A stretch of 64,000 nt of DNA, taken from IMG/VR virus record IMGVR_UViG_3300005056_000001, positions 1 through 64,000 of that record; one strand, 5' to 3'. A program made the translations under genes and the position numbers. This document shows positions 1 through 63,328 of this stretch, piece after piece. A model generated the notes under the pieces. It searched no databases and was not told the origin of the DNA. It saw nothing but the letters and a program-made list of their open reading frames with translations. How positions within the stretch are numbered: position 1 is the stretch's first letter; each line of letters begins with the position of its first letter.

Positions 1-865
1 CGGTACTTGTGGTTGCTAGATTAACGGTTATCACTTGCCCACTTAAATTAAGCGTGTCGTCGGTGGTGTCCGAAACAACTCCGCCAAGTGTTAGTGTGTC
101 ATGTATCGAAATATTCAATGAATCAATATCACCCTGAAGTTCTTCTAATGCTGCTTGCGTATCTGTACTGCTCAAATTCCCTGTTGGCACAACCGAAATA
201 CCACTTGCATCGGTTGTGACGATCTCTCTAATTTCCCAATTAGGAACACCATCATTGACATACAGGGCATCCTTGTTTTGTGTATCCACATATGATATCC
301 AACCCTCGCTTGGAGTTGTTCCAATCCAAACACTACCATTGAATTCTGCTATATCACCTTTTGTTGCACTATCCCATGCAGCATTTATGGTTCCAACAGT
401 AAAGTCAATAATATACCTGTCTCCCAAAACCTCTGTTGGTGGAACAAGGGTGCTATTTGCAATGTCGATAACCTTTTGTCTTCTGTTGTAACTAGACGTC
501 AATGCCGAAATATCGGTTTGGTTAGTCGTGATTTGATTGCGTTCGGCATTTGTGATAATGGCTCCCGAACCCGCATTTGTTACGTCATTAAATTCGGTCA
601 CACTATGCAAAGACGGGTCAAATGTACCGCCTCCAACAACAGGAACAAACTTTGTTGTTATGTCATCTAACAGATCTTCGAAAGTCGTGTAATCCCCATC
701 ATTAATCCAATCAACCTCTCTAATACGAACAAATGTACCGTCTTTCATTGAGAGTGTTGCAATCGGATTTTCATCACTAATGGCACTAATGAGGTCTATT
801 CTAATAAGTCGTGCAGTCGGCCCATATCTCATCCATGAACTCCCAACTGCTGTGAATAATGACAT
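1..865 (-). CDS. DUF2793-domain virion/tail-fibre-like protein (runs off the window edge; missing from ORF track)
   Basis: Manually translated open frame from ATG at 865 (MSLFTAVGSSW...) to the edge; contains PPTEVLGDRYII...AAWDSATKGDIAEFNGSVWIGTTPSEGWISYV, matching the DUF2793 pattern. Confidence 0.75.
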   Translation of the reverse strand, partial: MSLFTAVGSSWMRYGPTARLIRIDLISAISDENPIATLSMKDGTFVRIREVDWINDGDYTTFEDLLDDITTKFVPVVGGGTFDPSLHSVTEFNDVTNAGSGAIITNAERNQITTNQTDISALTSSYNRRQKVIDIANSTLVPPTEVLGDRYIIDFTVGTINAAWDSATKGDIAEFNGSVWIGTTPSEGWISYVDTQNKDALYVNDGVPNWEIREIVTTDASGISVVPTGNLSSTDTQAALEELQGDIDSLNISIHDTLTLGGVVSDTTDDTLNLSGQVITVNLATTST

Positions 866-5869: not shown

Positions 5870-6232
5870 CTAGTCACGATTGTATAATATTCTTAAACAG
5901 TCCTTTAGCGCCTCGACCTTGCCAAAATTAACCGAGGCCGCATTGTATGTGGTGTCGCTGTAGGTGATATCCTTTCTACCATCCCACTTTTCCAACTCGT
6001 CTTCGGATTCTTTTAGGTGGTACTTAATTGAGTTTATATGGTTTCCTTTAGAAGGTTCCGTAATAATACAATAGTGTGTGTAGTCGGAGTCTAGAAGATA
6101 CCCACCATCATCTCCCTTGAATGTCTTATAGTTATTCGTCATGCTCCCCTTGAGAACACTGCCATCGTGTTTCCTAACCAATACAGGCGTGTCACGCTGT
6201 ACCATGTTGTCCTTTACTTCAATCCAATTCAT
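5870..6232 (-). CDS. DUF551-like protein
   Basis: N-terminal MNWIEVKD...PVLV and THY motif typical of DUF551. Confidence 0.55.
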   Translation of the reverse strand: MNWIEVKDNMVQRDTPVLVRKHDGSVLKGSMTNNYKTFKGDDGGYLLDSDYTHYCIITEPSKGNHINSIKYHLKESEDELEKWDGRKDITYSDTTYNAASVNFGKVEALKDCLRILYNRD

Positions 6233-6324
6233 TTGTATATATTGTTGTTTGTGAACATTTTTTCAACAATAGTAAACAAAAAAATCCGTACCACCAAATG
6301 ATAGCACGAATTTTTTTAATAAAA

Positions 6325-6451
6325 GGACGATACATCGGATTCGAACCAACAGCCCGCCATTACCTCGAGTAGCAAATAGACTACCCTCGACTTTGCAGAA
6401 TGGTTTACATTTCTGCTTTCATACACTTTCCAAGTATGTAGGTGTCGCCCC
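6325..6451 (-). ncRNA. tRNA-like non-coding RNA without a canonical anticodon arm
   Basis: Terminal stem GGGCGACAC/GTATCGTCC; D-like arm CATAC-TTGGAAAGT-GTATG; two further hairpins; T arm GTTGG-TTCGAAT-CCGAT. Confidence 0.65.
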
Positions 6452-6452
6452 T

Positions 6453-6749
6453 TTACTCTTCCAAACCAAGTTTAGCTAGAATAGCAGAAACTTTATTAGA
6501 TATTAATTTCGCAACACTTTCTTCTACCTTTGTCTGTATTTTGTAGGTTGACACTTGGTTTCTTATCGCATGCCTTAATACCTCGGTTGTTTGTTTTTCA
6601 ACTTCGCCTACGATATCGAAATTATCAATAGCCTTTTTTACACCCTCCTGTATTTTTGCCTCAATGTCTTTGTTATTCAGCACAACCTGACTCATGATAC
6701 TTGATGCTGCCACTTCTATCTCAAACTTTACTTTAGTCTCACCCTTCAT
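6453..6749 (-). CDS. hypothetical helical protein
   Basis: ORF. Confidence 0.7.
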   Translation of the reverse strand: MKGETKVKFEIEVAASSIMSQVVLNNKDIEAKIQEGVKKAIDNFDIVGEVEKQTTEVLRHAIRNQVSTYKIQTKVEESVAKLISNKVSAILAKLGLEE

Positions 6750-6791
6750 TTTGTTTTTATTTTTATTTTTATTATCCTATTAAATATTTAC

Positions 6792-7856
6792 CTAGAATAG
6801 CAATGAAATATCCACTCCCGTCTGTGCAAGAACCTCTCTTTCGATCTCGTCCCAAATGAATATATTATTGATTTGGGAATGCCCCTCGTCGATCAAGTCT
6901 CCTAGGCGGGCTTTGATTCCATCTCTAATACTGTGGGTGTCCTTGTTGTCTGCACATACAGTACTAATCATTGCATGCAACACAAACATTGATTCCCTGT
7001 TGTCCATCCCATAGGTCGGGAGCAAGATATCGTCAACCGAAATGAATTGCCCATGTTGTCCATATCTAAAAAGAATATTCCTGAAGTTGGGTATTTTTTT
7101 GATGTTTTGTTTGTGGGTGACGTTCCAATGCTCCATAAACAGTGTCACCGAAATTGCCAACTTGGTGGGTGATGGTTCCTTGGTAACCGCAACGATCACC
7201 GTGGGACTAGCAAGATCGTCTACGCCATAAAACTCATATCCGTTGGTATTGAAGGTAATAGGAGTACCCTTTTCTTTTTCTACAATTTCGCCGTCGCTTA
7301 TATCGCCAACACTGCTCAAATATCTATTGGCAGAATCTTTTGAGTCAAAATAGCCATCGTCTGTTGTTAGTATGGATATCTCTTTCCCGTCAATAAAAAT
7401 GGTGCTATCTGTAAAGTCCTCTACCATGACAGGAGACAATTTTGTTTTAAGATCCTCGTTGTTTAGGTTGTTTAGGTGATACCAAACATACAACGTTTTT
7501 TTGTTGTACGGACAACCCTCGCAAATCTCGGTATTTCTTAGACTTCTTCTTCCGCTGTCGTCTGATGTGTTAATTAGGCTATTAACAAATGCATATGCAT
7601 TTTGTTGTTGGTCAAGATTGCTGTATAGTTTAGGAATGTATTCCTTCCATGCCACAACCTGTTCCATGCTCTTTAACAAGGCCGACACAGGGGATTGGGT
7701 GTTGCTCATGGCATCATTTGAATAGGAGTTTAAAAATGTATCATCCTCTGTGTCATAACATATCGTAAATTCTCTCCACCCGCCCTGACACTTGGCATCG
7801 CCTAATTTTGAATGTATCTCCCATTGTTCCCAAATATCACAGACTCTTTTTTCCAT
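6792..7856 (-). CDS. hypothetical protein
   Basis: 354-aa ORF, translationally coupled to the upstream ORF. Confidence 0.8.
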   Translation of the reverse strand: MEKRVCDIWEQWEIHSKLGDAKCQGGWREFTICYDTEDDTFLNSYSNDAMSNTQSPVSALLKSMEQVVAWKEYIPKLYSNLDQQQNAYAFVNSLINTSDDSGRRSLRNTEICEGCPYNKKTLYVWYHLNNLNNEDLKTKLSPVMVEDFTDSTIFIDGKEISILTTDDGYFDSKDSANRYLSSVGDISDGEIVEKEKGTPITFNTNGYEFYGVDDLASPTVIVAVTKEPSPTKLAISVTLFMEHWNVTHKQNIKKIPNFRNILFRYGQHGQFISVDDILLPTYGMDNRESMFVLHAMISTVCADNKDTHSIRDGIKARLGDLIDEGHSQINNIFIWDEIEREVLAQTGVDISLLF

Positions 7857-50767: not shown

Positions 50768-50885
50768 ATGTAGTATAGCAGGGCTGATGATAGATTTATC
50801 ATCAGCCTTTAGTATCGTGTATGTATTGTGCTTGGTCATGATTTGTATTTTTAAATAGGTCTGTGTCGTATCTGTTATAAACTAG

Positions 50886-50972
50886 TAGAAGAAGTGGGAG
50901 TCGAACCCACACGAGTCGTTAGCTCCGAACGGTTTTCAAAACCGTGGCCACCGCCCATTGGCTTGCTCTTCC
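50886..50972 (-). tRNA. tRNA-Ser(TGA)
   Basis: ACGGT-TTTGAAA-ACCGT anticodon arm; long variable arm; TTCGA T loop. Confidence 0.85.
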
Positions 50973-51283
50973 TAATCTACAATACAACAACAAATTTCTT
51001 CAACTAATTGGGTGTCGTTGACAACATATGCGTTTCTTGATGGTAAAAATAAGAATGCCTTTGAATTGTTGACCCGTTCGATAAAGTCTGTTGTTATTAA
51101 ACCGTCTCTTACAGAAAAAATTTCTAGACTTTTCATTACACTTTCGGCAACAGCACTCACGGTTTCGTGTTTTTCAACAACTCTATTTTCGGAATCGCTC
51201 CAAAATACATGGGGACAGGAAACCTCAATAATCAATTCTTCCTTAATTCCATATTTTCCGACCAAATCATTCTTAGTAATCAT
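50972..51283 (-). CDS. hypothetical protein within tRNA cluster
   Basis: ORF. Confidence 0.6.
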   Translation of the reverse strand: MITKNDLVGKYGIKEELIIEVSCPHVFWSDSENRVVEKHETVSAVAESVMKSLEIFSVRDGLITTDFIERVNNSKAFLFLPSRNAYVVNDTQLVEEICCCIVD

Positions 51284-51354
51284 ATTGTATTTTGTTTTGT
51301 TTTGTTTTGTTAATAATCACATAACGCAATTATACAATATTTATTCAAAACTTG

Positions 51355-51437
51355 TGGGGGTAGAAGGACTCGAACCTACTCAGTCATAGACACTAGATTT
51401 ACAGTCTAGCACGGCTCTCCAACTCCGTCGCACTCCC
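51355..51437 (-). tRNA. tRNA-Tyr(GTA)
   Basis: CTAGA-CTGTAAA-TCTAG anticodon arm; long variable arm. Confidence 0.9.
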
Positions 51438-51545
51438 ATATTAACATGGTATATTTTTTCGATTATGACACTTTGTTTGGTTAAGCTATCATGGAAACTT
51501 TCCACGGAAGGGCTTCCACCTTCTTGTCTTCATAAAAGTTTCTTG

Positions 51546-51620
51546 GGCACATGACGGGATTCGAACCCGTGACCCTCGGTACCACAAACCGATGCTCTAA
51601 CCGTCTGAGCTACACGAACC
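51546..51620 (-). tRNA. tRNA-His(GTG)
   Basis: TCGGT-TTGTGGT-ACCGA anticodon arm; G-1 and C73. Confidence 0.9.
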
Positions 51621-51631
51621 ATATATTTTAG

Positions 51632-51704
51632 TGGAGCAGGAGGGACTTGAACCCACATCCTTCGCATTGCAAATGCGATGCTCAGCCAATTGAGCTACTG
51701 TCCC
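51632..51704 (-). tRNA. tRNA-Ala(TGC)
   Basis: TCGCA-TTTGCAA-TGCGA anticodon arm; G3:U70; A73. Confidence 0.92.
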
Positions 51705-53363: not shown

Positions 53364-54143
53364 CTATACTCCCAATGTTCTTGTATAATTTTGAAATCTA
53401 AGCTTCACGATCTTGGTACGGTCACTATTCCTTAAGACAACACCCTCCGACCTCATTTTTGCGCTATCAGACAGAGCCACCAAGGTTTTTGGAACAACCG
53501 TATTAAGATAGTCCAAAATGGTTTGGTGATCGAAATTTTTGATATCAACAGGGAGCTGAGGAACCTGTGCAAAATTGTATTTTTTACAAAATTCTGTGAG
53601 TTCGGTGTTTGTGAGGAAGTCGTGTCCATACACAATACCGTTGTCTGTTTCGTATTCTCGGAATGACGAAATTTCTTTGATATCCAACTCAAGAATAGAC
53701 AAATCCTTGATTGTTATTACATCAAAAATACGACAGCCGTATTCATTCTTTGTTCCGTACTGTTTTGAGGCCTTACCAACCGATCCACCATAGAGCTCGC
53801 CATAAATGACGGTCAATTCCTTGAAGTCTGTCGGGAAGGTAACCATTTTTCTGAGTTCGTCAACGATATCCAAGGCAGAATTACGACATAGGTCTTTTGA
53901 ATATGTCAAAATCTCTTTTCTTGAACCAATCAAATATTCATTCCCCCAACAGATCATACGAAAATTTGTGCCATCAACCTTTTCCGAGCCACACAGCTCA
54001 TCGTCCAACGAAATGTCGGTTGCAAGCTCATTCGTCAACATACCCCTGTCACCGATTTTGTGGAGCGTTTTGATTGACGGATACTTGGTCAACGTATTAA
54101 TCTTGTCGATGCCATATTTTAAAACAAGTTCTTTTAATTTCAT
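53364..54143 (-). CDS. ATP-dependent RNA ligase (Rnl2-like nucleotidyltransferase)
   Basis: Motif I EKVDGTN, III YGELYG, IIIa IFD, IV EGVVLR, V KLR. Confidence 0.85.
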   Translation of the reverse strand: MKLKELVLKYGIDKINTLTKYPSIKTLHKIGDRGMLTNELATDISLDDELCGSEKVDGTNFRMICWGNEYLIGSRKEILTYSKDLCRNSALDIVDELRKMVTFPTDFKELTVIYGELYGGSVGKASKQYGTKNEYGCRIFDVITIKDLSILELDIKEISSFREYETDNGIVYGHDFLTNTELTEFCKKYNFAQVPQLPVDIKNFDHQTILDYLNTVVPKTLVALSDSAKMRSEGVVLRNSDRTKIVKLRFQNYTRTLGV

Positions 54144-54252
54144 TTTTACTTTTATGATTTGTTAATATTTTGATTTAGGCAAATATACAAAAAAGGCAGG
54201 ACAATGTATAATCATGTCCCACCTTTCTTGCGCAATATTTTTAATCAATATC

Positions 54253-56388
54253 TTATGCCTGATACAAATTACCGTCAGACCCAAACAAGATCACACCCTC
54301 CAATGTCGGAATTTCTCCGAGCGCAACAGAAGGGATACCCTTCTCACGGCATAAATCTGCCGTGTGGTTGAACAAGCTTTTGTTTGTGACAATAACACCC
54401 TTATAACCGTCAATGTCGGAAGGCGAGGCAAAATCACCGATAAAAATATCTTTTACATCAACTTCCATGGCATCATCAACCGAAAGATTAAGACCCTCGT
54501 GTAAAAGAGGCATGTCTGTGTCGAATGGTTTGATTTCGATGTTACCAACCATGTTTTTATATGCTGCCTGACTAATTTTGCCACACTGATAAAGATCCGT
54601 AAAATAGGCAACCTTGATACGCTTGGTAAGGATGGCAGGCTTTAGTTGGGTGATAATAATATTCCCCTTGTTGTTGACAATAAATTCCACAACACTTGCC
54701 TTTGTTCCAATTTCTCTTGCCTTCATCACCTCCTTGAGGTATGCAATTTGGTCGCCTGTCAGAACATCATAAATGTCACTACCGACAACATTCCCAAGAT
54801 TGTATTCGCTTGCGTCCCCTTGTACACACTCCCCAAATAGTCCTGTCTTGCCTGTAATCGGGTGGTGGTTATAAACAACCCCACCAACTTTAGACTCGAT
54901 ATATTCTTGGATACCAAGCGCAAAACCAAATCCCCATTCCTCGGGAAACGTGTTGTTGTCTTTTCCTTCCTTAATGATAGCCACAATTTCTGTTTTGAGT
55001 TCTTCTAATGTCACAACCCCAATATTTTTTGTTGGCAACTGACCCGATAGCGGCATCATAGGAGAAGTTCGAAGGATAATTTTTTTGCCCTCAAGACTTG
55101 TTACCCCCCTGAATGAGCACTTGGCAGCAAATGTGAAATCGTCAAGTGCCTCGAGTCCTTTTGTATAGATATCCTTGCACATATTCGAATTAAGTACAAC
55201 AAACACAGGAACCTCAGTTTTGCTATTCCCACGGAGATTTTTAAGATTTTGGTATTTTGTGCCATTCCACTTGTCTCCTTTGCCAATCATATTAAATTGA
55301 AAGATATCTTTTATGTTTCTTCCAAGCTCAAACCCTTTATAGCTTTCTGCCGCCAATGCCGCATAGACATCCGCCACTTTTACTTTGTTTTGGGAGCGTG
55401 AATCGACCACAAGTGTTTCCAAACCAAACCGAACATGCCATTCCAAGACGGTGTGTAGTTGTGAGATCGTTTCCATGCCGTGCATATGCCATGTGCCGTT
55501 TCTCATATAGAGGCAGTTATCCTTTTCCCATCCATTGCGCATTACGGCAGGCTCTAGATTATTTAGATGAACCAATATCTCATTTGCATCCAAATAAATT
55601 TTCCCTTCAGGATCCACCATTGCAGAAAAGCTGTGAAAGCCGTATGATTTGTTGTCATAGGAACAACCCGATTGCTGTCTTAATTGCTCGTTGCTCATGT
55701 ATCCCAATACATAGGCAGGAGTATAATCATAGCCATCAGGCATCCAATTGTCATGGATTTGGTTGTGTGGCGTTGTATTGAATGATGTCCCAAACAGCTC
55801 ATTTAGTGCAGCCAATTCGGAAATAAAAGCCTCCATTTTTCTTCTGTAAGAATGTTTAGGGAAAAGCAGTTCCTCCCACTCGTTTTCTTCAATCTTCTTG
55901 AAGTGTTTTGCAAGAACGTCCCTGTCGTATGAGTCGATTGGGGCAGTCTCGTATTCGGAGTCTTCCTTTTTTACAAAGTGTTTCGTAAGCAAATCCTTGT
56001 CATACGAATCAAGTATAGAACACTCCAACTTATTTTTTAACTCGACCAACTTGTCGCCTGTATTGACCATCCATGCAACATCATAGATTTCTTTTACAAG
56101 CTTTTCGGCCACCCATGTTCGGTTAAGCACCAAATGAGTTTCAGAATCACACAAAGAAAGAATCGCCTTCTTTTCTGTTTCGACGTGTGGATGGTCACTG
56201 AAGGTCATAAACCTCCGACCCTCAAGGATGTCAATATAGATAGCATCAGACAAACCATTTTGTGTGGCTTCTCTGAGCATGGATATTGCGCTCTTGACTC
56301 GAAGGTGTGTAAACTCCTCCCTTGCAACATATGTGATACGTTCTAATTCGGCCTTTAGGTCTACTCTTGGTATTGTTATGCTTTCCAT
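54253..56388 (-). CDS. PPDK/PEP-synthase-like ATP-grasp plus phospho-His swivel protein with unknown N-terminal domain
   Basis: KYQNL, VPVFVV, LRTS, SGQ, IQEYI, GGVVY...PITG, EF, TQLKP; swivel GVIVT...NHTADLCREKGIPSV. Confidence 0.7.
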   Translation of the reverse strand: MESITIPRVDLKAELERITYVAREEFTHLRVKSAISMLREATQNGLSDAIYIDILEGRRFMTFSDHPHVETEKKAILSLCDSETHLVLNRTWVAEKLVKEIYDVAWMVNTGDKLVELKNKLECSILDSYDKDLLTKHFVKKEDSEYETAPIDSYDRDVLAKHFKKIEENEWEELLFPKHSYRRKMEAFISELAALNELFGTSFNTTPHNQIHDNWMPDGYDYTPAYVLGYMSNEQLRQQSGCSYDNKSYGFHSFSAMVDPEGKIYLDANEILVHLNNLEPAVMRNGWEKDNCLYMRNGTWHMHGMETISQLHTVLEWHVRFGLETLVVDSRSQNKVKVADVYAALAAESYKGFELGRNIKDIFQFNMIGKGDKWNGTKYQNLKNLRGNSKTEVPVFVVLNSNMCKDIYTKGLEALDDFTFAAKCSFRGVTSLEGKKIILRTSPMMPLSGQLPTKNIGVVTLEELKTEIVAIIKEGKDNNTFPEEWGFGFALGIQEYIESKVGGVVYNHHPITGKTGLFGECVQGDASEYNLGNVVGSDIYDVLTGDQIAYLKEVMKAREIGTKASVVEFIVNNKGNIIITQLKPAILTKRIKVAYFTDLYQCGKISQAAYKNMVGNIEIKPFDTDMPLLHEGLNLSVDDAMEVDVKDIFIGDFASPSDIDGYKGVIVTNKSLFNHTADLCREKGIPSVALGEIPTLEGVILFGSDGNLYQA

Positions 56389-56515
56389 GATATTTTTTTA
56401 ATGCTATGTTATTGATTGATGTAAATGTATGCAAAAATATATTGTTATCAAAATGTATTTGTTGGTTTTAACATTTCTTTAACACTTCATATTGTTTTTG
56501 CGTTGGTTGAAATCC

Positions 56516-57433
56516 CTAAGAGAGGTATACCATGCTATCCACAAACCTCTTTGTTTTTGGTGGCATATATTCAATGTCATTACAGAACACATCCATACGC
56601 TCTAGCCGATCTGTGATAATGTTGTCCATTGTCTCAGGGAACGCCTTAATGTAATTATTGTCAAGAAATAACTTTTCTATGCTGTCTAGACCACCAATAG
56701 AGTCAGGAATTGTACTTATTCTGTTATCCGAGAAACACAAAAACGTTACATTTTTCAAATTTCCGATATTTGAAGGAATAGCCTCCAACTGATTAAAACG
56801 AAATATTGCATACTCAAGACGTTCTAAATCACAAAAGCTATCAGGAATCTTTTTTAACTTTGTTCCTTGGCAATAAAAATATACCAACGATTTGAGGTTG
56901 CCTAGGTTTTCGGATAGACGTTCTATGTTGTTGCGTCCAATATTTAAAGTGTACAACCTAGGCATTTCATAAATACTATCAGGAATACCTGTCAAAAAAT
57001 TATCGTCCAAGTCTAAACGTTCTAAATTCTCAAGATTACCGATACATTTATTAACAGACGACATCCTGTTGTTTCTAAGACAAAGAGATGTTAAACATCC
57101 AAGGTTGCCTATGGTGTCGGGAAGTGTTGTTATATGATTATTACTAAGGTGTAATTGTTTTAAGTTAGTTAAAAGCTCTATGCTGTCAGGAACATATTTC
57201 ACTCTATTCGAAGTTATTGAAAGCTCCTCCATGTCGTGTATATACATGACCAATGACTTCGGGACACAAGCCCTAGTGTCAAAAATATCATTATCCTCAA
57301 GCCACCCATTCAGCTTTTTATATGACCCTAAATCCAATTCGATATCGTTCGACTTTGCCAACTCAAACCCCAATTCTATATTCGACTCGTCGCCTGTTTT
57401 GAGCAAAGACATAATTTTTTCTTTTCTGTACAT
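56516..57433 (-). CDS. leucine-rich repeat protein
   Basis: About 9-10 repeats of a 23-aa LxxLxLxxNxLxxLPxxIxxL pattern. Confidence 0.9.
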   Translation of the reverse strand: MYRKEKIMSLLKTGDESNIELGFELAKSNDIELDLGSYKKLNGWLEDNDIFDTRACVPKSLVMYIHDMEELSITSNRVKYVPDSIELLTNLKQLHLSNNHITTLPDTIGNLGCLTSLCLRNNRMSSVNKCIGNLENLERLDLDDNFLTGIPDSIYEMPRLYTLNIGRNNIERLSENLGNLKSLVYFYCQGTKLKKIPDSFCDLERLEYAIFRFNQLEAIPSNIGNLKNVTFLCFSDNRISTIPDSIGGLDSIEKLFLDNNYIKAFPETMDNIITDRLERMDVFCNDIEYMPPKTKRFVDSMVYLS

Positions 57434-58795: not shown

Positions 58796-59371
58796 TCAAT
58801 CATTGAATCTAAACTTATAAACCAATGAGCTTTTTTCAAGGAAGACATAGTATACGATGTCCGACTGTGACAATTCCTCGTAGCGGACATCATCAATGCT
58901 TGGTATATTAATATTTGTCGTCGCATTACCAACAATCAACCCTCTTTGGGTTGTTGTTTTGGTCATATTTCGGTTGAGTTCGGCTTTGAATAACTGTGCC
59001 TTTAGAGATTGGTCATAAAGAGTAACCGAACAGTCTGAATCACCTAGCTTTTCCAACAGCTCGTTTAGATTTGTTGGGTTGCTGTAGCTTTTTAGGTTTT
59101 CAGAAATACTACCTCTGCCAATTTTATATTTCTTGTTCAGTGCATCAATTTCCTTCTTAACCTCTTTTATATATTGGTTATGAATAGCCGAACACTCATC
59201 CTTGAGGTCTGCCATCTTTACAATATCCTCGTCTAATGCTTTTTTGGCAAATTCGGCACCAACCAAGGACTGCATACTTTCTCTAATAATGTTGGCCTTT
59301 TTTTGTACCTCCTTAGAGGACATTTGGTCAAAACGTTTACTTTCGTTAAATACTTTAAATTTTTGTCTCAT
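58796..59371 (-). CDS. hypothetical protein
   Basis: ORF with N-terminal FKVFNES. Confidence 0.65.
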   Translation of the reverse strand: MRQKFKVFNESKRFDQMSSKEVQKKANIIRESMQSLVGAEFAKKALDEDIVKMADLKDECSAIHNQYIKEVKKEIDALNKKYKIGRGSISENLKSYSNPTNLNELLEKLGDSDCSVTLYDQSLKAQLFKAELNRNMTKTTTQRGLIVGNATTNINIPSIDDVRYEELSQSDIVYYVFLEKSSLVYKFRFND

Positions 59372-60361: not shown

Positions 60362-63328
60362 TTACACAATCTTAGAAGTTCCCCATGACAGACTTTTCTT
60401 GCCGTCATTGTCCTCGGTGCGCTCCATTAGATTATCAAACAAAGTCGAATCAATTCCAAATTCTTCAAATACTCCATCAAGCGTGGCGGTGTCTTTGGTT
60501 TTGATAAACTCGTTAATTTTTTCTTTGTCCATTAGCAGGGCCAAGATGTTTTTTTCTATTGTTCCGTCATACGACACGAAATGTACATCAGTATGATTCA
60601 CAGAATTATAACGAATGAAACGGAAATAAAACTGTTCCATTCTTGGGATATTCCATTGAAGACCCTCGATGATTACCTTGTCACAAGTCGGAATGTTAAC
60701 CGATGACTTCAGGGATTGTTGTGTGCATACCAAAATACCATTCTCTGTGGCCTCGAATCTGTCTAGGATTGGTTGACGCTTGTCGATACTTACGTCCCCT
60801 GTAATCACAAAAATTTGACGCTCAGGAAAAAGAATTGTAAGGTTTTCGACATATAGTTTTATGGTTTCTTTTCGGGTACATCCAATTGCAACTTTTTCGT
60901 CAAATTTTTGACACAATTGGGCAATTTTATAAAACTTGGTTGGTAGGTCTCCCTTGTAATCCGAAAATGAATTCGGGGTACTACATGCCTTGTACAACAA
61001 TTGCATTTGGCGAACTATTCTGAGGGCAGCATCTTTTCGTGTGCTGCCTGTTGACCCATAAAACTCGCTGATTATGCGGTGGAACTCACGGATTATCACG
61101 CCATAAATTCTTGCCTCATCGGCTGTTTGGTTCACATACTCTGTGTGTACCGTGAATTTTTCTCCTGCAATTTCTTTGAATTTTCTTGTTATGATTGATT
61201 GGTCAATGATCGAGACCAATTTGTCTTGATTGAAAACGTCTTGGTTTTGTTTCTTGATTCCAAAAACGGTTGCCTTGGAAGGATTAAAACAAGACTTGAA
61301 TTGTCCGAATCCCAAACGTGCCTTGTATGGCTGCATGTGGTTTTTATTGTCACGACTTTTTATGTCGCCTTCCTTGTTTTGGACATAGGTCATTTTACAG
61401 GAGTCCAACATATTCACAGAATTATTGAACAACAATTCTAATTGTGGGTATAGTTCTGTGATATTGTTTCTTGTGGTGGTTCCTGTTGCCAAAAACTTTC
61501 TTTTAACACGTCTAAAAATGTCACGGCTTGCACGAGATCGTTTTGATGTGTTTGAACAAATTTCGTCGGACTCATCCATGACAAGACAAACCTTATTACT
61601 CAACGACTTAACCAATTTTTGTAGCTCTTTTTTGAACTTGATAAGCATATTAAAACTAATCAACACAATAGAACCACTGTTTAAAATATGGCTTCTTTTG
61701 GTTATTATGGTATACTCCTCGCCCTGTGTATTCAAAAACTCTGTCCATGTTGTTTTAATGGCCAAAGAAGGAGCCACTATAAATGTTTTTTTGACTTTTG
61801 GTTGGTTGTATTTTGCAAATGCATAACACCCGCCCGTTTTTCCGCAACCCTGTTGCCAATTACAGATTGAATATTGTTTTTGTAAAAAAAGGTTTAGGTC
61901 ATGCGCCTGTATATTATTAAACTTACAGGTCACGGTTTTTTTGTTGCCTAATTTGTCGGTGTCTTCTCTCAGAAAACTAAAATCTTTTAACCATGCAGCA
62001 ATAGACTCACTTTGGGTCATTTCTGAAAATGGTGTTGTTATCTTTTTATTCTCTGCGATCTTGCGTGTGATCAGTTTATTGTATGGGTGGTCAAGATCTT
62101 TTGTCGGTATAAGGTTGGTACCCAACACCAAGTCGCTAAGGGAATACTTTTTCTTTTGTGCCTTTGGGGCCTTACCCTTGACAACAAAGCCATGACGGTG
62201 TTTTACGACTCTTAGAGTCTTGTTGGCCGCCTTTTTATTTTGGGTCTTAACAATTCTTTTTAGATAGGCAAGAACCTTGTTTTCGGTAAGCATTTTCTTG
62301 CTCCATTCGCTGTCCTCCATGCCCATTGGCTTGGTCTGTGTATTGAATTTTTCGATATACGAAATCGCACTGTCCAACTTGGCAGATATTTCGCCGTGTT
62401 GCTTGATTTCAAAAAGGTATTTCTTGACTCTAAACCCAAAATCATCATTTGTTAGCGACTTGTTAAACTCAAGACGTAACGCCGATTTAATATTGTGGCG
62501 CAATGCCAATTTCTTGGAAATTTCTGATTTTGTGCTAACACTATTCGTGTAAGGAACATCCTTGAGATGTTCGGACTTTTTTTGAAGATAGATAACCTTG
62601 GTATTATAATTCTTTACCCCCAAGGCACCAAAGGCATCATTTGTCAGTTGATATTGACCCACGAAATTAAACATCCTGTCTAGGTCATTTATTTGAGACT
62701 TATAATACATCTCGTCGCCAAGGTACGAAGTCGGAACAATGGCCGCCACAACCCCGCCATTTTTTAACATCTTGGCACACATTTTAAAAAACAGTGCATG
62801 GCTTCTGACATGCGTGTTTGTTTCGGTGTCGAACCACTCAAGACTAAAAGGAGGATTGCCCAACACGACATCAAACTTATTTTCGATGGTATTGTTTGGC
62901 AGACTTGCCTCGGTAAAGTCTGCATCAGGATACAGACGGTTGGCAACCTGCACAGACTTTGGACAAATATCCATCCCATGAAAAACGGATTCGTTAGGCA
63001 CAAAATTACAAAACACACCCATTCCACATGTCGGATCCACAATCAATTCGTTTGAGGCAAGACCCACGATATCCACAATATCACTTGCAATCATGGCAGG
63101 TGTATAAAATTGGCCATTCTCGACCTCCTTTTTTGCTGCCGAGTACTCATAGTAATTACGATAGTCTTTAAATTCTAAACCATGCAACCCTCCATCACCC
63201 GTATAGGCATTAAAAATTTGCTCATTGCTAATGGCAGCGGAATCCAATTGGATTGCCATTAAGATCTTACTATTGACCGTTTTGCGGTGGTCTTGTGGTA
63301 TTGTATCGGTAAGGATATTGTATTTCAT
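60362..63328 (-). CDS. N6-adenine DNA methyltransferase / SNF2-type helicase fusion (DarB-like)
   Basis: GQFYTP, DPTCGMG, NPPF; helicase QQGCGKT, MDESD, ATGT, SVNI, QFYFRFIR. Confidence 0.8.
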   Translation of the reverse strand: MKYNILTDTIPQDHRKTVNSKILMAIQLDSAAISNEQIFNAYTGDGGLHGLEFKDYRNYYEYSAAKKEVENGQFYTPAMIASDIVDIVGLASNELIVDPTCGMGVFCNFVPNESVFHGMDICPKSVQVANRLYPDADFTEASLPNNTIENKFDVVLGNPPFSLEWFDTETNTHVRSHALFFKMCAKMLKNGGVVAAIVPTSYLGDEMYYKSQINDLDRMFNFVGQYQLTNDAFGALGVKNYNTKVIYLQKKSEHLKDVPYTNSVSTKSEISKKLALRHNIKSALRLEFNKSLTNDDFGFRVKKYLFEIKQHGEISAKLDSAISYIEKFNTQTKPMGMEDSEWSKKMLTENKVLAYLKRIVKTQNKKAANKTLRVVKHRHGFVVKGKAPKAQKKKYSLSDLVLGTNLIPTKDLDHPYNKLITRKIAENKKITTPFSEMTQSESIAAWLKDFSFLREDTDKLGNKKTVTCKFNNIQAHDLNLFLQKQYSICNWQQGCGKTGGCYAFAKYNQPKVKKTFIVAPSLAIKTTWTEFLNTQGEEYTIITKRSHILNSGSIVLISFNMLIKFKKELQKLVKSLSNKVCLVMDESDEICSNTSKRSRASRDIFRRVKRKFLATGTTTRNNITELYPQLELLFNNSVNMLDSCKMTYVQNKEGDIKSRDNKNHMQPYKARLGFGQFKSCFNPSKATVFGIKKQNQDVFNQDKLVSIIDQSIITRKFKEIAGEKFTVHTEYVNQTADEARIYGVIIREFHRIISEFYGSTGSTRKDAALRIVRQMQLLYKACSTPNSFSDYKGDLPTKFYKIAQLCQKFDEKVAIGCTRKETIKLYVENLTILFPERQIFVITGDVSIDKRQPILDRFEATENGILVCTQQSLKSSVNIPTCDKVIIEGLQWNIPRMEQFYFRFIRYNSVNHTDVHFVSYDGTIEKNILALLMDKEKINEFIKTKDTATLDGVFEEFGIDSTLFDNLMERTEDNDGKKSLSWGTSKIV

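What the first reader, a model, noticed from the sequence alone, without database searches (positions are those of the whole stretch)
54253..56388. Phage PPDK-like phosphotransferase lacking the pyruvate domain
Seen: ATP-grasp motifs and a terminal His-swivel domain (NHTADLCREKGIP), no pyruvate-binding TIM barrel, and about 350 aa of unknown N-terminal sequence. Some motifs deviate (TQLKP versus LQxRP). Established: this two-domain core is reused with other substrate domains in rifampin phosphotransferase and the glutamine kinase Cj1418. Inference: a kinase for a novel substrate, such as a nucleotide, RNA end or host protein. The neighbouring RNA ligase needs 5'-P ends and no Pnkp is visible in this window, but a promoter lies between the two genes.
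Basis: partly seen in the sequence, partly recalled or inferred. Interest (0 to 1): 0.6.

Follow-up and report, generated by a model that had tools for sequence, protein, structure and literature searches.

The report
Orphan phage PPDK-like histidine phosphotransferase
A 368-kb jumbo phage encodes a very divergent relative of pyruvate phosphate dikinase that keeps the ATP-binding and phospho-histidine carrier domains but replaces the pyruvate domain with a 365-residue N-terminal region that has no known relatives; it is probably a kinase for an unknown target, and the proposed link to RNA repair is weak.

Summary
The ORF is real: 54253-56388, minus strand, 711 aa. Residues ~367-711 are a PPDK-type ATP-grasp domain plus a His-swivel domain. 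Evidence:
- hhalign probability 98.9%, E 3.7e-17, to a clade of truncated phage-like PPDK relatives.
- AF2 core pLDDT 80-98; C. symbiosum PPDK Z 27.2 over 338 residues; rifampin phosphotransferase Z 24.3.

No PEP/pyruvate TIM barrel exists in the protein or anywhere in the genome. Residues 1-365 match nothing except one paralog at 71.9 kb.

His675, the Mg ligands E568/Q581, K378 and R440 are kept. Several near-invariant family residues are replaced: D321 to V, R337 to K, GGxTSH to KSLFNH.

The family is tiny: two paralogs and two metagenomic fragments among 1.84 billion representatives.

The RNA-repair idea gets limited support. For it: an adjacent RNA ligase, the phage's only tRNA cluster 1.7-2.5 kb beyond the ligase gene, no recognisable Pnkp genome-wide, and one distant homolog also next to an RNA ligase. 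Against it: a strong terminator hairpin and a promoter-like box separate the two genes, the N-terminal region is acidic, and other phage PPDK-like genes lack ligase neighbours.

Verdict: a new variant of a known kind, acceptor unknown.

The parts
54253..56388 (-). ORF of 711 aa (P0001): a truncated, highly divergent PPDK-like protein
   Evidence: paralog and fragments
55744..56388 (-). Residues 1-215: mostly helical, acidic N-terminal region. It is poorly conserved against the paralog and contains a ~21-aa repeat, DSYDKDLLTKHF.../DSYDRDVLAKHF... (residues 127-147 and 153-173), present once in the paralog.
   Evidence: no family hit
55294..55743 (-). Residues 216-365: predicted alpha/beta region shared with the paralog (29% identity). 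Candidate acceptor-binding domain; fold unresolved (pLDDT 30-73).
54523..55293 (-). Residues 366-622: compact PPDK-type ATP-grasp nucleotide-binding domain. Kept: K378, R440, Q494, E520, E568, Q581. Changed: V566 for D321 and K583 for R337 (PPDK numbering).
54256..54522 (-). Residues 623-711: phospho-histidine swivel (PEP-utilizers mobile) domain
   Evidence: residues 625-711 match the pyruvate kinase C-terminal domain 2E28, Z 10.2
54364..54366 (-). Codon of His675, aligned with the catalytic His455 of C. symbiosum PPDK. It sits in the motif KSLFNHTADLCREKG instead of GGxTSHAAxxAR.
54186..54232 (-). A-tract/hairpin/U-tract terminator-like element directly after the stop codon of P0001
   Evidence: 97-nt fold -28.8 kcal/mol, z -5.3, 0 of 200 shuffles as good
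54180..54187 (-). TATATTTG (TAnnTTTG, Bacteroidota-type -7 box) 44 nt upstream of the ligase ATG
   Evidence: a sigma-70-like hit also lies at 54210-54182
56432..56439 (-). TATTTTTG box 51 nt upstream of the P0001 ATG
53364..54143 (-). Downstream neighbour: RNA ligase (PF09414, 259 aa, motif I K55-VDGTN)
56516..57433 (-). Upstream neighbour: leucine-rich-repeat protein (305 aa), one of about 28 LRR genes in this genome
50885..51704 (-). The only tRNA genes of the genome (Ala, His, Tyr, Ser), 1.7-2.5 kb beyond the ligase gene

Best explanation
P0001 is an ATP-dependent phosphotransferase of the PPDK/PEP-synthase/rifampin-phosphotransferase (dikinase) type that has exchanged the pyruvate domain for a new N-terminal module.

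Inferred mechanism, by homology:
1. Mg-ATP binds the compact ATP-grasp domain (residues ~367-622; K378, R440, E568, Q581).
2. The beta-phosphoryl group is passed to His675 of the C-terminal swivel domain (residues ~623-711). AMP is released, and the gamma-phosphate goes to water or Pi.
3. The swivel domain carries the phosphoryl group to an acceptor held by the N-terminal region, most likely the alpha/beta part at residues ~216-365 that the paralog shares.

The acceptor is not pyruvate and is unknown. My ranking of acceptor classes: small molecule or metabolite about 0.45, protein about 0.2, RNA or tRNA 5' end about 0.15, glycan or other about 0.2.

Shown: fold, homology, residue conservation, absence of a TIM barrel, rarity of the family. 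Inferred: catalysis, the role of the N-terminal region, the class of acceptor.
For: - Homology of residues 371-688 to truncated PPDK-like proteins: hhalign probability 98.9%, E 3.7e-17. Profile hits to bona fide PPDK_N + PEP-utilizers proteins.
- Structure: PPDK Z 27.2 over 338 residues, RPH Z 24.3, PEP synthase Z 16.3, HpeI Z 12.3. Foldseek top hit is 1DIK at E 8e-15. The BFVD top hit is Bacillus phage G gp139, a two-domain protein.
- Residues kept where 63 distant relatives are at least 90% identical: G376, K378, R440, G449, Q494, G503, E520, G532, E568, Q581, H675, R681. In the alignment to 1DIK these correspond to E323, Q335 and H455.
- The same residues are kept in the paralog (39% identity by BLAST over the shared core) and in two metagenomic fragments, one nearer each paralog. 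This implies selection on both copies.
- Precedents for the same core used with other acceptors: RPH (PMC4844700) and the HpeHI, MarK, GWD, HapC and N-P kinases listed. VadK is a truncated PPDK that autophosphorylates on His with Mg-ATP (PMC13400623).
Against: - Several residues that are near-invariant in the family are replaced in all members of this small clade: D321 equivalent to V/L, R337 equivalent to K, the GG before the His to K/P/S-S/T, T453 equivalent to F/Y, and two Arg of the WxSxxxRAxxYR helix to D and P. The PDB holds K22A, R337A and T453A mutant entries of PPDK, so these are sites that have been studied.
- Both Pfam domains score below their gathering cut-offs.
- The N-terminal region could not be modelled (pLDDT <50 for most of residues 1-370). 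Its role as acceptor site is a guess from architecture alone.
- No expression data were found.
Confidence: 0.6

Rival explanations
1. RNA-end kinase for tRNA/RNA repair. The enzyme phosphorylates 5'-OH ends of cleaved tRNA or RNA through phospho-His675, so that the neighbouring PF09414 ligase can seal them. It would replace the missing P-loop Pnkp.
For: - The ligase is the next gene downstream.
- All four tRNA genes lie 1.7-2.5 kb beyond the ligase gene.
- No AAA_33, PNK3P or cREC domain and no small Walker-A kinase was found in the genome.
- The distant homolog P0007 is two genes from a PF09414 ligase, and P0009 is six genes from a cREC cyclic-phosphate-processing gene.
- Jumbo-phage ATP-dependent RNA ligases usually travel with polynucleotide kinases (PMC7824862).
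Against: - A terminator-like hairpin and a promoter-like box lie between the two genes.
- The paralog P0002 and the second ligase at 169.9 kb are not linked to each other's family.
- PF09414 is absent from Vibrio phage SIO-2, Stenotrophomonas phage DLP_3 and Rhodobacter phage RcZahn, and lies 22 kb away in Bacillus phage G.
- Only 1 of 14 related loci holds a ligase by a local HMM.
- The two ligases are unrelated beyond family level.
- The N-terminal region is acidic, pI 5.3-5.4.
- No 3'-end healing enzyme was found either.
- No known dikinase in the literature I searched acts on nucleic acid.
Confidence: 0.15
2. VadK-like regulatory histidine kinase. The protein autophosphorylates on His675 and acts on or through a protein partner (host or phage), possibly recruited by the N-terminal helical region or by a neighbouring LRR protein, rather than turning over a small substrate.
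For: - VadK shows that a truncated PPDK can work this way (PMC13400623).
- Both paralogs have an LRR gene immediately upstream.
- The long helical N-terminus is typical of interaction modules.
Against: - The genome has about 28 LRR genes, and P0002 sits inside an LRR cluster.
- The two adjacent LRR proteins are not each other's closest paralogs, so there is no sign that a two-gene unit was duplicated.
- No binding test was run.
Confidence: 0.15
3. Catalytically dead derivative (pseudoenzyme) that keeps the fold for binding a nucleotide or another protein.
For: - Loss of the GGxTSH loop and of the D321, R337 and T453 equivalents, and of two conserved Arg.
- Sub-threshold Pfam scores.
- Extreme divergence.
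Against: - The His, both Mg ligands, the Lys and the Arg of the nucleotide site are retained in every member at 32-61% identity.
- The replacements are themselves conserved within the clade, which fits an altered rather than a lost active site.
Confidence: 0.1

Closest known systems
Pyruvate phosphate dikinase (C. symbiosum PPDK, PDB 1DIK/1KBL) and PEP synthase (2OLS)
   Same: - PPDK-type ATP-grasp directly followed by the His-swivel domain.
- Best structural match: Z 27.2, rmsd 3.5 A, 338 residues.
- K22, R92, E323, Q335 and H455 equivalents are kept.
   Different: - No PEP/pyruvate TIM barrel.
- A 365-aa N-terminal addition.
- The ATP-grasp is about 110 residues shorter (model 370-622 against PPDK 14 to ~380).
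- D321V, R337K, and GGxTSH changed to KSLFNH.
- 14-18% identity.
Rifampin phosphotransferase (RPH-Lm, PDB 5HV1/5HV3; PMC4844700)
   Same: - The same ATP-grasp plus His-swivel pair used to phosphorylate a non-pyruvate acceptor; ATP gives AMP + Pi + phospho-product.
- Z 24.3.
   Different: - In RPH the acceptor (RIF-binding) domain is inserted between the ATP-grasp and the swivel domain.
- Here the two are contiguous and the extra region is N-terminal.
- No similarity to the RIF-binding domain was detected.
VadK (Rv1127c) of M. tuberculosis (PMC13400623)
   Same: - A PPDK relative that lacks the TIM barrel; it autophosphorylates its catalytic His with Mg-ATP.
- A Nocardia protein of this architecture (P0016) appears among relatives of P0007.
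   Different: - VadK is about 490 aa with no large extra domain and keeps the canonical motifs.
- P0001 has 365 extra residues and altered motifs.
- No direct sequence hit between them.
Phage-encoded 'pyruvate phosphate dikinase/kinase' genes (Vibrio phage SIO-2 group, Stenotrophomonas DLP_3/DLP_5, Rhodobacter RcZahn, Bacillus phage G gp139) and the metagenomic P0007 clade
   Same: - Phage-borne truncated PPDK-like proteins without a TIM barrel.
- gp139 is the best BFVD structural match.
- The P0007 clade also has an N-terminal helical extension.
   Different: - They keep GGxTSH, D and R and pass Pfam thresholds.
- Their accessory regions are unrelated to the N-terminus of P0001 (hhalign probability <1%).
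- P0001 is not found by tblastn in 50,697 phage records.
- All of them are functionally uncharacterised; papers treat them as metabolic PPDK (PMC9229204).
T4-type polynucleotide kinase-phosphatase (Pnkp)
   Same: Only the genomic setting: next to an RNA ligase and near tRNA genes.
   Different: Pnkp is a P-loop kinase fused to a HAD/PNK3P phosphatase. P0001 has neither fold.

Membership tests
PPDK/PEP-utilising dikinase superfamily (ATP-grasp + phospho-His swivel) | PPDK_N-type ATP-grasp nucleotide-binding domain | tested here: met
   hhalign probability 98.9%; Z 27.2 to 1KBL. The Pfam PF01326 score is only 15 bits against a cut-off of 27.
PPDK/PEP-utilising dikinase superfamily (ATP-grasp + phospho-His swivel) | Swivel (PEP-utilizers) domain carrying the catalytic His | tested here: met
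   His675 aligns with the invariant His (63/63) and with H455 of 1DIK. Residues 625-711 superpose on swivel-type domains. PF00391 scores 18.2 bits against a cut-off of 23.1.
PPDK/PEP-utilising dikinase superfamily (ATP-grasp + phospho-His swivel) | Nucleotide/Mg site residues (K22, R92, E323, Q335 of CsPPDK) | tested here: met
   K378, R440, E568 and Q581 are conserved in all family members.
PPDK/PEP-utilising dikinase superfamily (ATP-grasp + phospho-His swivel) | Canonical GGxTSH loop, D321 and R337 | tested here: not met
   KSLFNH replaces GGxTSH; V566 replaces D (60/63); K583 replaces R (63/63).
PPDK/PEP-utilising dikinase superfamily (ATP-grasp + phospho-His swivel) | ATP-dependent autophosphorylation on His; AMP as product | not testable with these tools
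   Needs biochemistry.
Pyruvate phosphate dikinase / PEP synthase proper | C-terminal PEP/pyruvate-binding TIM barrel (PF02896) | tested here: not met
   The protein ends at the swivel domain. There is no PF02896 match anywhere in the genome at E<=0.1.
Rifampin phosphotransferase | Acceptor-binding domain inserted between the ATP-grasp and the swivel domain | tested here: not met
   The ATP-grasp (to ~622) is followed directly by the swivel domain (from ~625). RPH aligns only through its residues -1..318 and ~770-866.
VadK-type truncated PPDK | Two-domain protein (~490 aa) with canonical motifs, actinobacterial | tested here: not met
   711 aa with a 365-aa N-terminal addition and altered motifs. 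Only the architecture of the core is shared.
Glutamine kinase Cj1418 | Specific similarity to Cj1418 and its acceptor site | not tested
   No Cj1418 sequence or structure appeared in any search. It is mentioned only in the literature.
Polynucleotide kinase (Pnkp) | P-loop kinase domain, usually with a 3'-phosphatase | tested here: not met
   No AAA_33 or PNK3P match. The fold is ATP-grasp.

The most novel reading that the evidence does not exclude
P0001 is the first polynucleotide 5'-OH kinase built on a dikinase (ATP-grasp plus phospho-His) scaffold. It would heal broken tRNA or RNA ends for the adjacent PF09414 ligase in a jumbo phage that lacks any P-loop Pnkp. Its paralog and the P0007 clade (one member also next to an RNA ligase) would extend this into a new class of RNA-repair kinases.
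Probability: 0.12. Interest if true: 0.85.

Novelty: new variant of a known kind. Interest (0 to 1): 0.45.

Why it matters
The PPDK core is a reusable machine: charge a histidine from ATP, then swing it to a second site. Each new acceptor domain found so far has defined a new chemistry: rifampin inactivation, starch phosphorylation, N-P bond formation, aromatic catabolism and VadK regulation.

This phage clade couples that core to an N-terminal region with no relatives in 5.8 billion protein clusters, and its active-site loop has been remodelled but is still conserved. Two diverged copies are maintained.

Finding the acceptor would add a new reaction to the family and a new phage strategy, whether host takeover, counter-defence or RNA repair. 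It would also help reinterpret the many phage genes now annotated as 'pyruvate phosphate dikinase' metabolic genes even though they lack the pyruvate domain.

Tried and rejected
- **Direct family scans.** Pfam, PHROGs, NCBIfam and PDB sequence searches on the whole protein gave nothing at normal thresholds.
- **Collection searches for relatives.** No relatives were found by the word-index protein search, tblastn in 50,697 phage records, or scans of viral, genome and metagenome contigs with the paralog alignment. A degenerate NHTADLCREKGI DNA pattern also found nothing. Related-locus scans with P0007 and its family alignment found nothing in viral contigs either.
- **First AF2 run.** With only two sequences it failed (pLDDT 33).
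- **N-terminal region.** The Atlas feature and structure search gave TM <=0.34, which is not meaningful. hhalign against the accessory regions of the P0007 clade and of the SIO-2, DLP_3 and RcZahn proteins gave probability <1%.
- **LRR + kinase two-gene module.** Rejected as evidence: the genome has about 28 LRR genes, and the two adjacent LRR proteins are not closest paralogs.
- **PTP-like phosphatase at 58796-59371.** The weak Myotubularin hit (E 9e-4) is rejected because there is no CX5R motif.
- **Second ligase at 169.9 kb.** Its neighbours are uninformative.
- **Sequencing runs.** Only small DNA shares in a subsurface metagenome study and no RNA run.
Full report
**1. Observation**

The window is the first 64 kb of a 368,109-bp virus record with direct terminal repeats, rated 100% complete: a jumbo phage. 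Its GC content is 38%. Its large helicase-containing protein is distantly similar (about 26% identity) to proteins of Tenacibaculum, Chryseobacterium and Sphingomonas jumbo phages. This suggests, but does not prove, a Bacteroidota host.

On the minus strand, 54253-56388 is an uninterrupted 711-codon ORF, P0001.

**2. Is it a PPDK-like protein?**

Standard family scans do not say so. Pfam, PHROGs and NCBIfam give nothing at E<0.01, and phmmer finds no PDB sequence. On fragments, PEP-utilizers (E 0.002) and PPDK_N (E 0.015) appear in the right order, but both are below their gathering cut-offs.

The genome holds one paralog, P0002 (581 aa, G000:71904-73649, minus strand). It is 39% identical by BLAST over residues 255-710 of P0001 and 37% in the full-length MAFFT alignment.

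Because the word search and the family scans left the protein open, I used the exhaustive representative search with the two-paralog profile. Seven proteins out of 1.84 billion scored E<=0.001:
- the paralog itself;
- two short metagenomic fragments, P0003 and P0004;
- four distant proteins that all carry bona fide PPDK_N and/or PEP-utilizers domains. One of them is a complete three-domain PPDK (P0005, E 3.6e-7, profile positions 391-693).

One fragment lies on a 1-kb contig whose two reading frames together cover residues 376-711 at 51-61% identity to P0001. The other fragment is nearer to P0002, at 48%. Both paralog lineages therefore exist in other, unsampled phages.

A profile-profile comparison of this small family with the P0007 clade gives probability 98.9%, E 3.7e-17, over residues 371-688.

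AF2 with a 68-row alignment gives pLDDT 80-98 for residues 372-711. That part matches:
- C. symbiosum PPDK: Foldseek E 8e-15; VIA Z 27.2, rmsd 3.5 A, 338 residues, model 370-711 against PPDK 14-508;
- rifampin phosphotransferase, Z 24.3;
- PEP synthase, Z 16.3;
- HpeI, Z 12.3.

In BFVD the best match is Bacillus phage G gp139. In the ESM Atlas the matches are PPDK_N + PEP-utilizers clusters.

In detail: a PPDK-type ATP-grasp (residues ~367-622) is followed directly by a His-swivel domain (residues ~623-711). There is no TIM barrel in the protein, and PF02896 is absent from the entire genome, so this is not a split PPDK.

**3. Active site**

I compared P0001 with 63 distant relatives at the columns where those relatives are at least 80-90% identical, and mapped positions onto 1DIK using the alignment.

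Kept in P0001 and its relatives:
- G376 and K378 (the GGKG lysine);
- R440 (the VRSS arginine);
- G449, Q494, G503 and E520;
- E568 (equivalent to E323) and Q581 (equivalent to Q335);
- H675 (equivalent to H455) and R681.

Replaced:
- D321 equivalent to V566 (D in 60 of 63);
- R337 equivalent to K583 (R in 63 of 63);
- GGxTSH to K-S-L-F-N-H (GG in 63 of 63);
- S474E, R477D and R482P in the WxS...RAxxYR helix;
- G379Y and S446P.

The replacements are conserved inside the clade. I read this as a remodelled but probably functional site, while noting that K22, R337 and T453 are positions for which PPDK mutant structures exist (entry titles). Catalysis itself is inferred, not shown.

**4. The N-terminal 365 residues**

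These residues have no match in Pfam, NCBIfam, PHROGs, PDB or the Atlas. They also show no relation to the accessory regions of other phage PPDK-like proteins.

- Residues 1-215 are predicted helical. They diverge strongly from the paralog and contain a short internal repeat.
- Residues 216-365 are predicted alpha/beta and are shared with the paralog at 29% identity.
- Both parts are acidic, with pI 5.3-5.4.
- The model is unreliable here (pLDDT mostly below 50, with 60-73 around residues 300-350), so the fold remains unknown.

**5. Context**

The gene order on the minus strand is:
- a 219-aa ORF;
- an LRR protein (56516-57433);
- P0001;
- an RNA ligase (53364-54143; PF09414, E 2e-18; motif I KVDGTN);
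- a 66-aa ORF;
- an HTH protein;
- then, after a GNAT gene on the plus strand, all four tRNA genes of the genome (50885-51704).

The 109-bp spacer between P0001 and the ligase folds into an A-tract/hairpin/U-tract structure (-28.8 kcal/mol for 97 nt; z -5.3; 0 of 200 shuffles as good). A TATATTTG box follows it, 44 nt before the ligase ATG. P0001 has TATTTTTG 51 nt before its own ATG.

Such TAnnTTTG boxes occur upstream of 55 of 526 ORFs, with a mode at 30-60 nt. That is only a mild enrichment. The two genes are therefore probably separate transcription units. This is an inference; no RNA data exist.

**6. The RNA-repair hypothesis**

In favour:
- Adjacency to the ligase and proximity to the tRNA genes.
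- No AAA_33, PNK3P or cREC domain genome-wide.
- All Walker-A ORFs are helicase, ABC or AAA-type proteins.
- The distant homolog P0007 sits two genes upstream of a PF09414 ligase on a phage-like contig.
- P0009 sits six genes from a cREC 'cyclic-phosphate processing' gene. Iyer et al. link that domain to RNA ligases in jumbo phages (PMC7824862).

Against:
- The terminator and promoter-like box between the two genes.
- The paralog and the second ligase (169.9 kb) are not paired with each other's family.
- The window ligase and the L008 ligase share only family-level similarity.
- Of four isolated phages with PPDK-like genes, three have no PF09414 gene, and in Bacillus phage G the nearest is 22 kb away.
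- A local ligase HMM finds a ligase in 1 of 14 related loci, although many of those loci are short.
- The accessory region is acidic.
- None of the characterised relatives found in the literature acts on nucleic acid.

I put this reading at about 0.12-0.15.

**7. The LRR neighbour**

Both paralogs have an LRR gene directly upstream. However, the genome has about 28 LRR genes, P0002 lies inside an LRR cluster, and the two neighbouring LRR proteins are not each other's closest paralogs. I do not treat this as a module.

**8. Comparison with what is known**

The core works like PPDK, PEP synthase or RPH, but the protein is not a PPDK (no TIM barrel) and not an RPH (no inserted acceptor domain).

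The nearest conceptual precedents are:
- RPH (PMC4844700);
- VadK, a truncated PPDK that autophosphorylates on His422 with Mg-ATP and interacts with methylcitrate-cycle enzymes (PMC13400623);
- the HpeHI, MarK, GWD and HapC enzymes and the N-P-bond kinases.

Truncated PPDK-like genes are also present in 57 phage isolate records: Vibrio SIO-2-like phages, Stenotrophomonas DLP_3 and DLP_5, RcZahn, Bacillus phage G and others. They are annotated as 'pyruvate phosphate dikinase' or 'kinase' and discussed as glycolytic auxiliary genes (PMC9229204), although they lack the pyruvate domain. Their neighbours include thymidylate synthase homologs and PTP-type phosphatases. P0001 is far more divergent than these and is not detectable by tblastn against them.

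**9. Verdict**

This is a genuine, selected and extremely rare clade of PPDK-derived His-phosphotransferases with a novel N-terminal module and a remodelled His loop. It is a new variant of a known kind, and the acceptor is unknown.

The general inference of a novel-substrate kinase is reasonable. The RNA-repair link is a minority hypothesis worth a direct test.

Noticed in passing
G000:C1:71904-73649 (outside the window; L002:1486-3231, minus strand): Paralog P0002 (581 aa) has the same core and the same NHTADLCREKGI motif, with a shorter N-terminus. It sits inside a cluster of LRR genes (65-75 kb). Its downstream genes (110 aa and 162 aa) have no family.
   Followed up: partly
whole genome G000; in the window only 56516-57433: About 28 leucine-rich-repeat protein genes (103 LRR_8 matches) are scattered in clusters at 65-75, 99-118, 135-143, 187-192, 213-214, 255 and 306 kb. 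This is an unusual expansion for a phage.
   Followed up: partly
window 50885-51704 (-): The genome's only four tRNA genes (Ser-TGA, Tyr-GTA, His-GTG, Ala-TGC) form one cluster next to the RNA ligase region.
   Followed up: partly
window 60362-63328 (-): A 988-aa fusion of an N6-adenine DNA methylase (N6_Mtase/Eco57I) with a DEAD/Helicase_C helicase.
   Followed up: no
L007 (JGI 3300068082, 203-kb contig), gene 6001-7131: P0008 is a minimal 376-aa ATP-grasp + swivel protein with an SHTAD motif. It lies directly after a Ter-type cluster: vWA-TerF, YAcAr, HAD hydrolase, PRTase_3, TerC, TerD.
   Followed up: no
L008 4098-7012; L020/L021; L023: In the P0007 clade a small ORF of 71-91 aa follows the PPDK-like gene directly, often overlapping it. 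In two loci a protein of about 435 aa precedes it. These may be partner subunits.
   Followed up: no
L013 (Stenotrophomonas phage DLP_3) and L014 (Rhodobacter phage RcZahn): The PPDK-like genes of these isolated phages lie near PTP-type 'tyrosine phosphatase' genes. In DLP_3 and SIO-2 they also lie near thymidylate synthase homologs. This recalls a kinase/phosphatase pair or a DNA-modification module.
   Followed up: no
L006 (NCBI GCA_040384045.1, 1030-bp contig): The closest homolog of P0001 (51-61% identity over residues 376-711) is split over two reading frames near position 640-650 of the contig. This could be a sequencing error or a real frameshift.
   Followed up: partly
window 55870-56010 (-), residues 127-173 of P0001: A tandem repeat of about 21 aa (DSYDKDLLTKHFVKKEDSEYE / DSYDRDVLAKHFKKIEENEWE) that is present once in the paralog.
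   Followed up: no
G000:C1:169705-170403 (L019:5706-6404, +): A second, shorter PF09414 RNA ligase (232 aa, motif KYDGTN), 3.7 kb downstream of a C-5 cytosine DNA methylase.
   Followed up: partly
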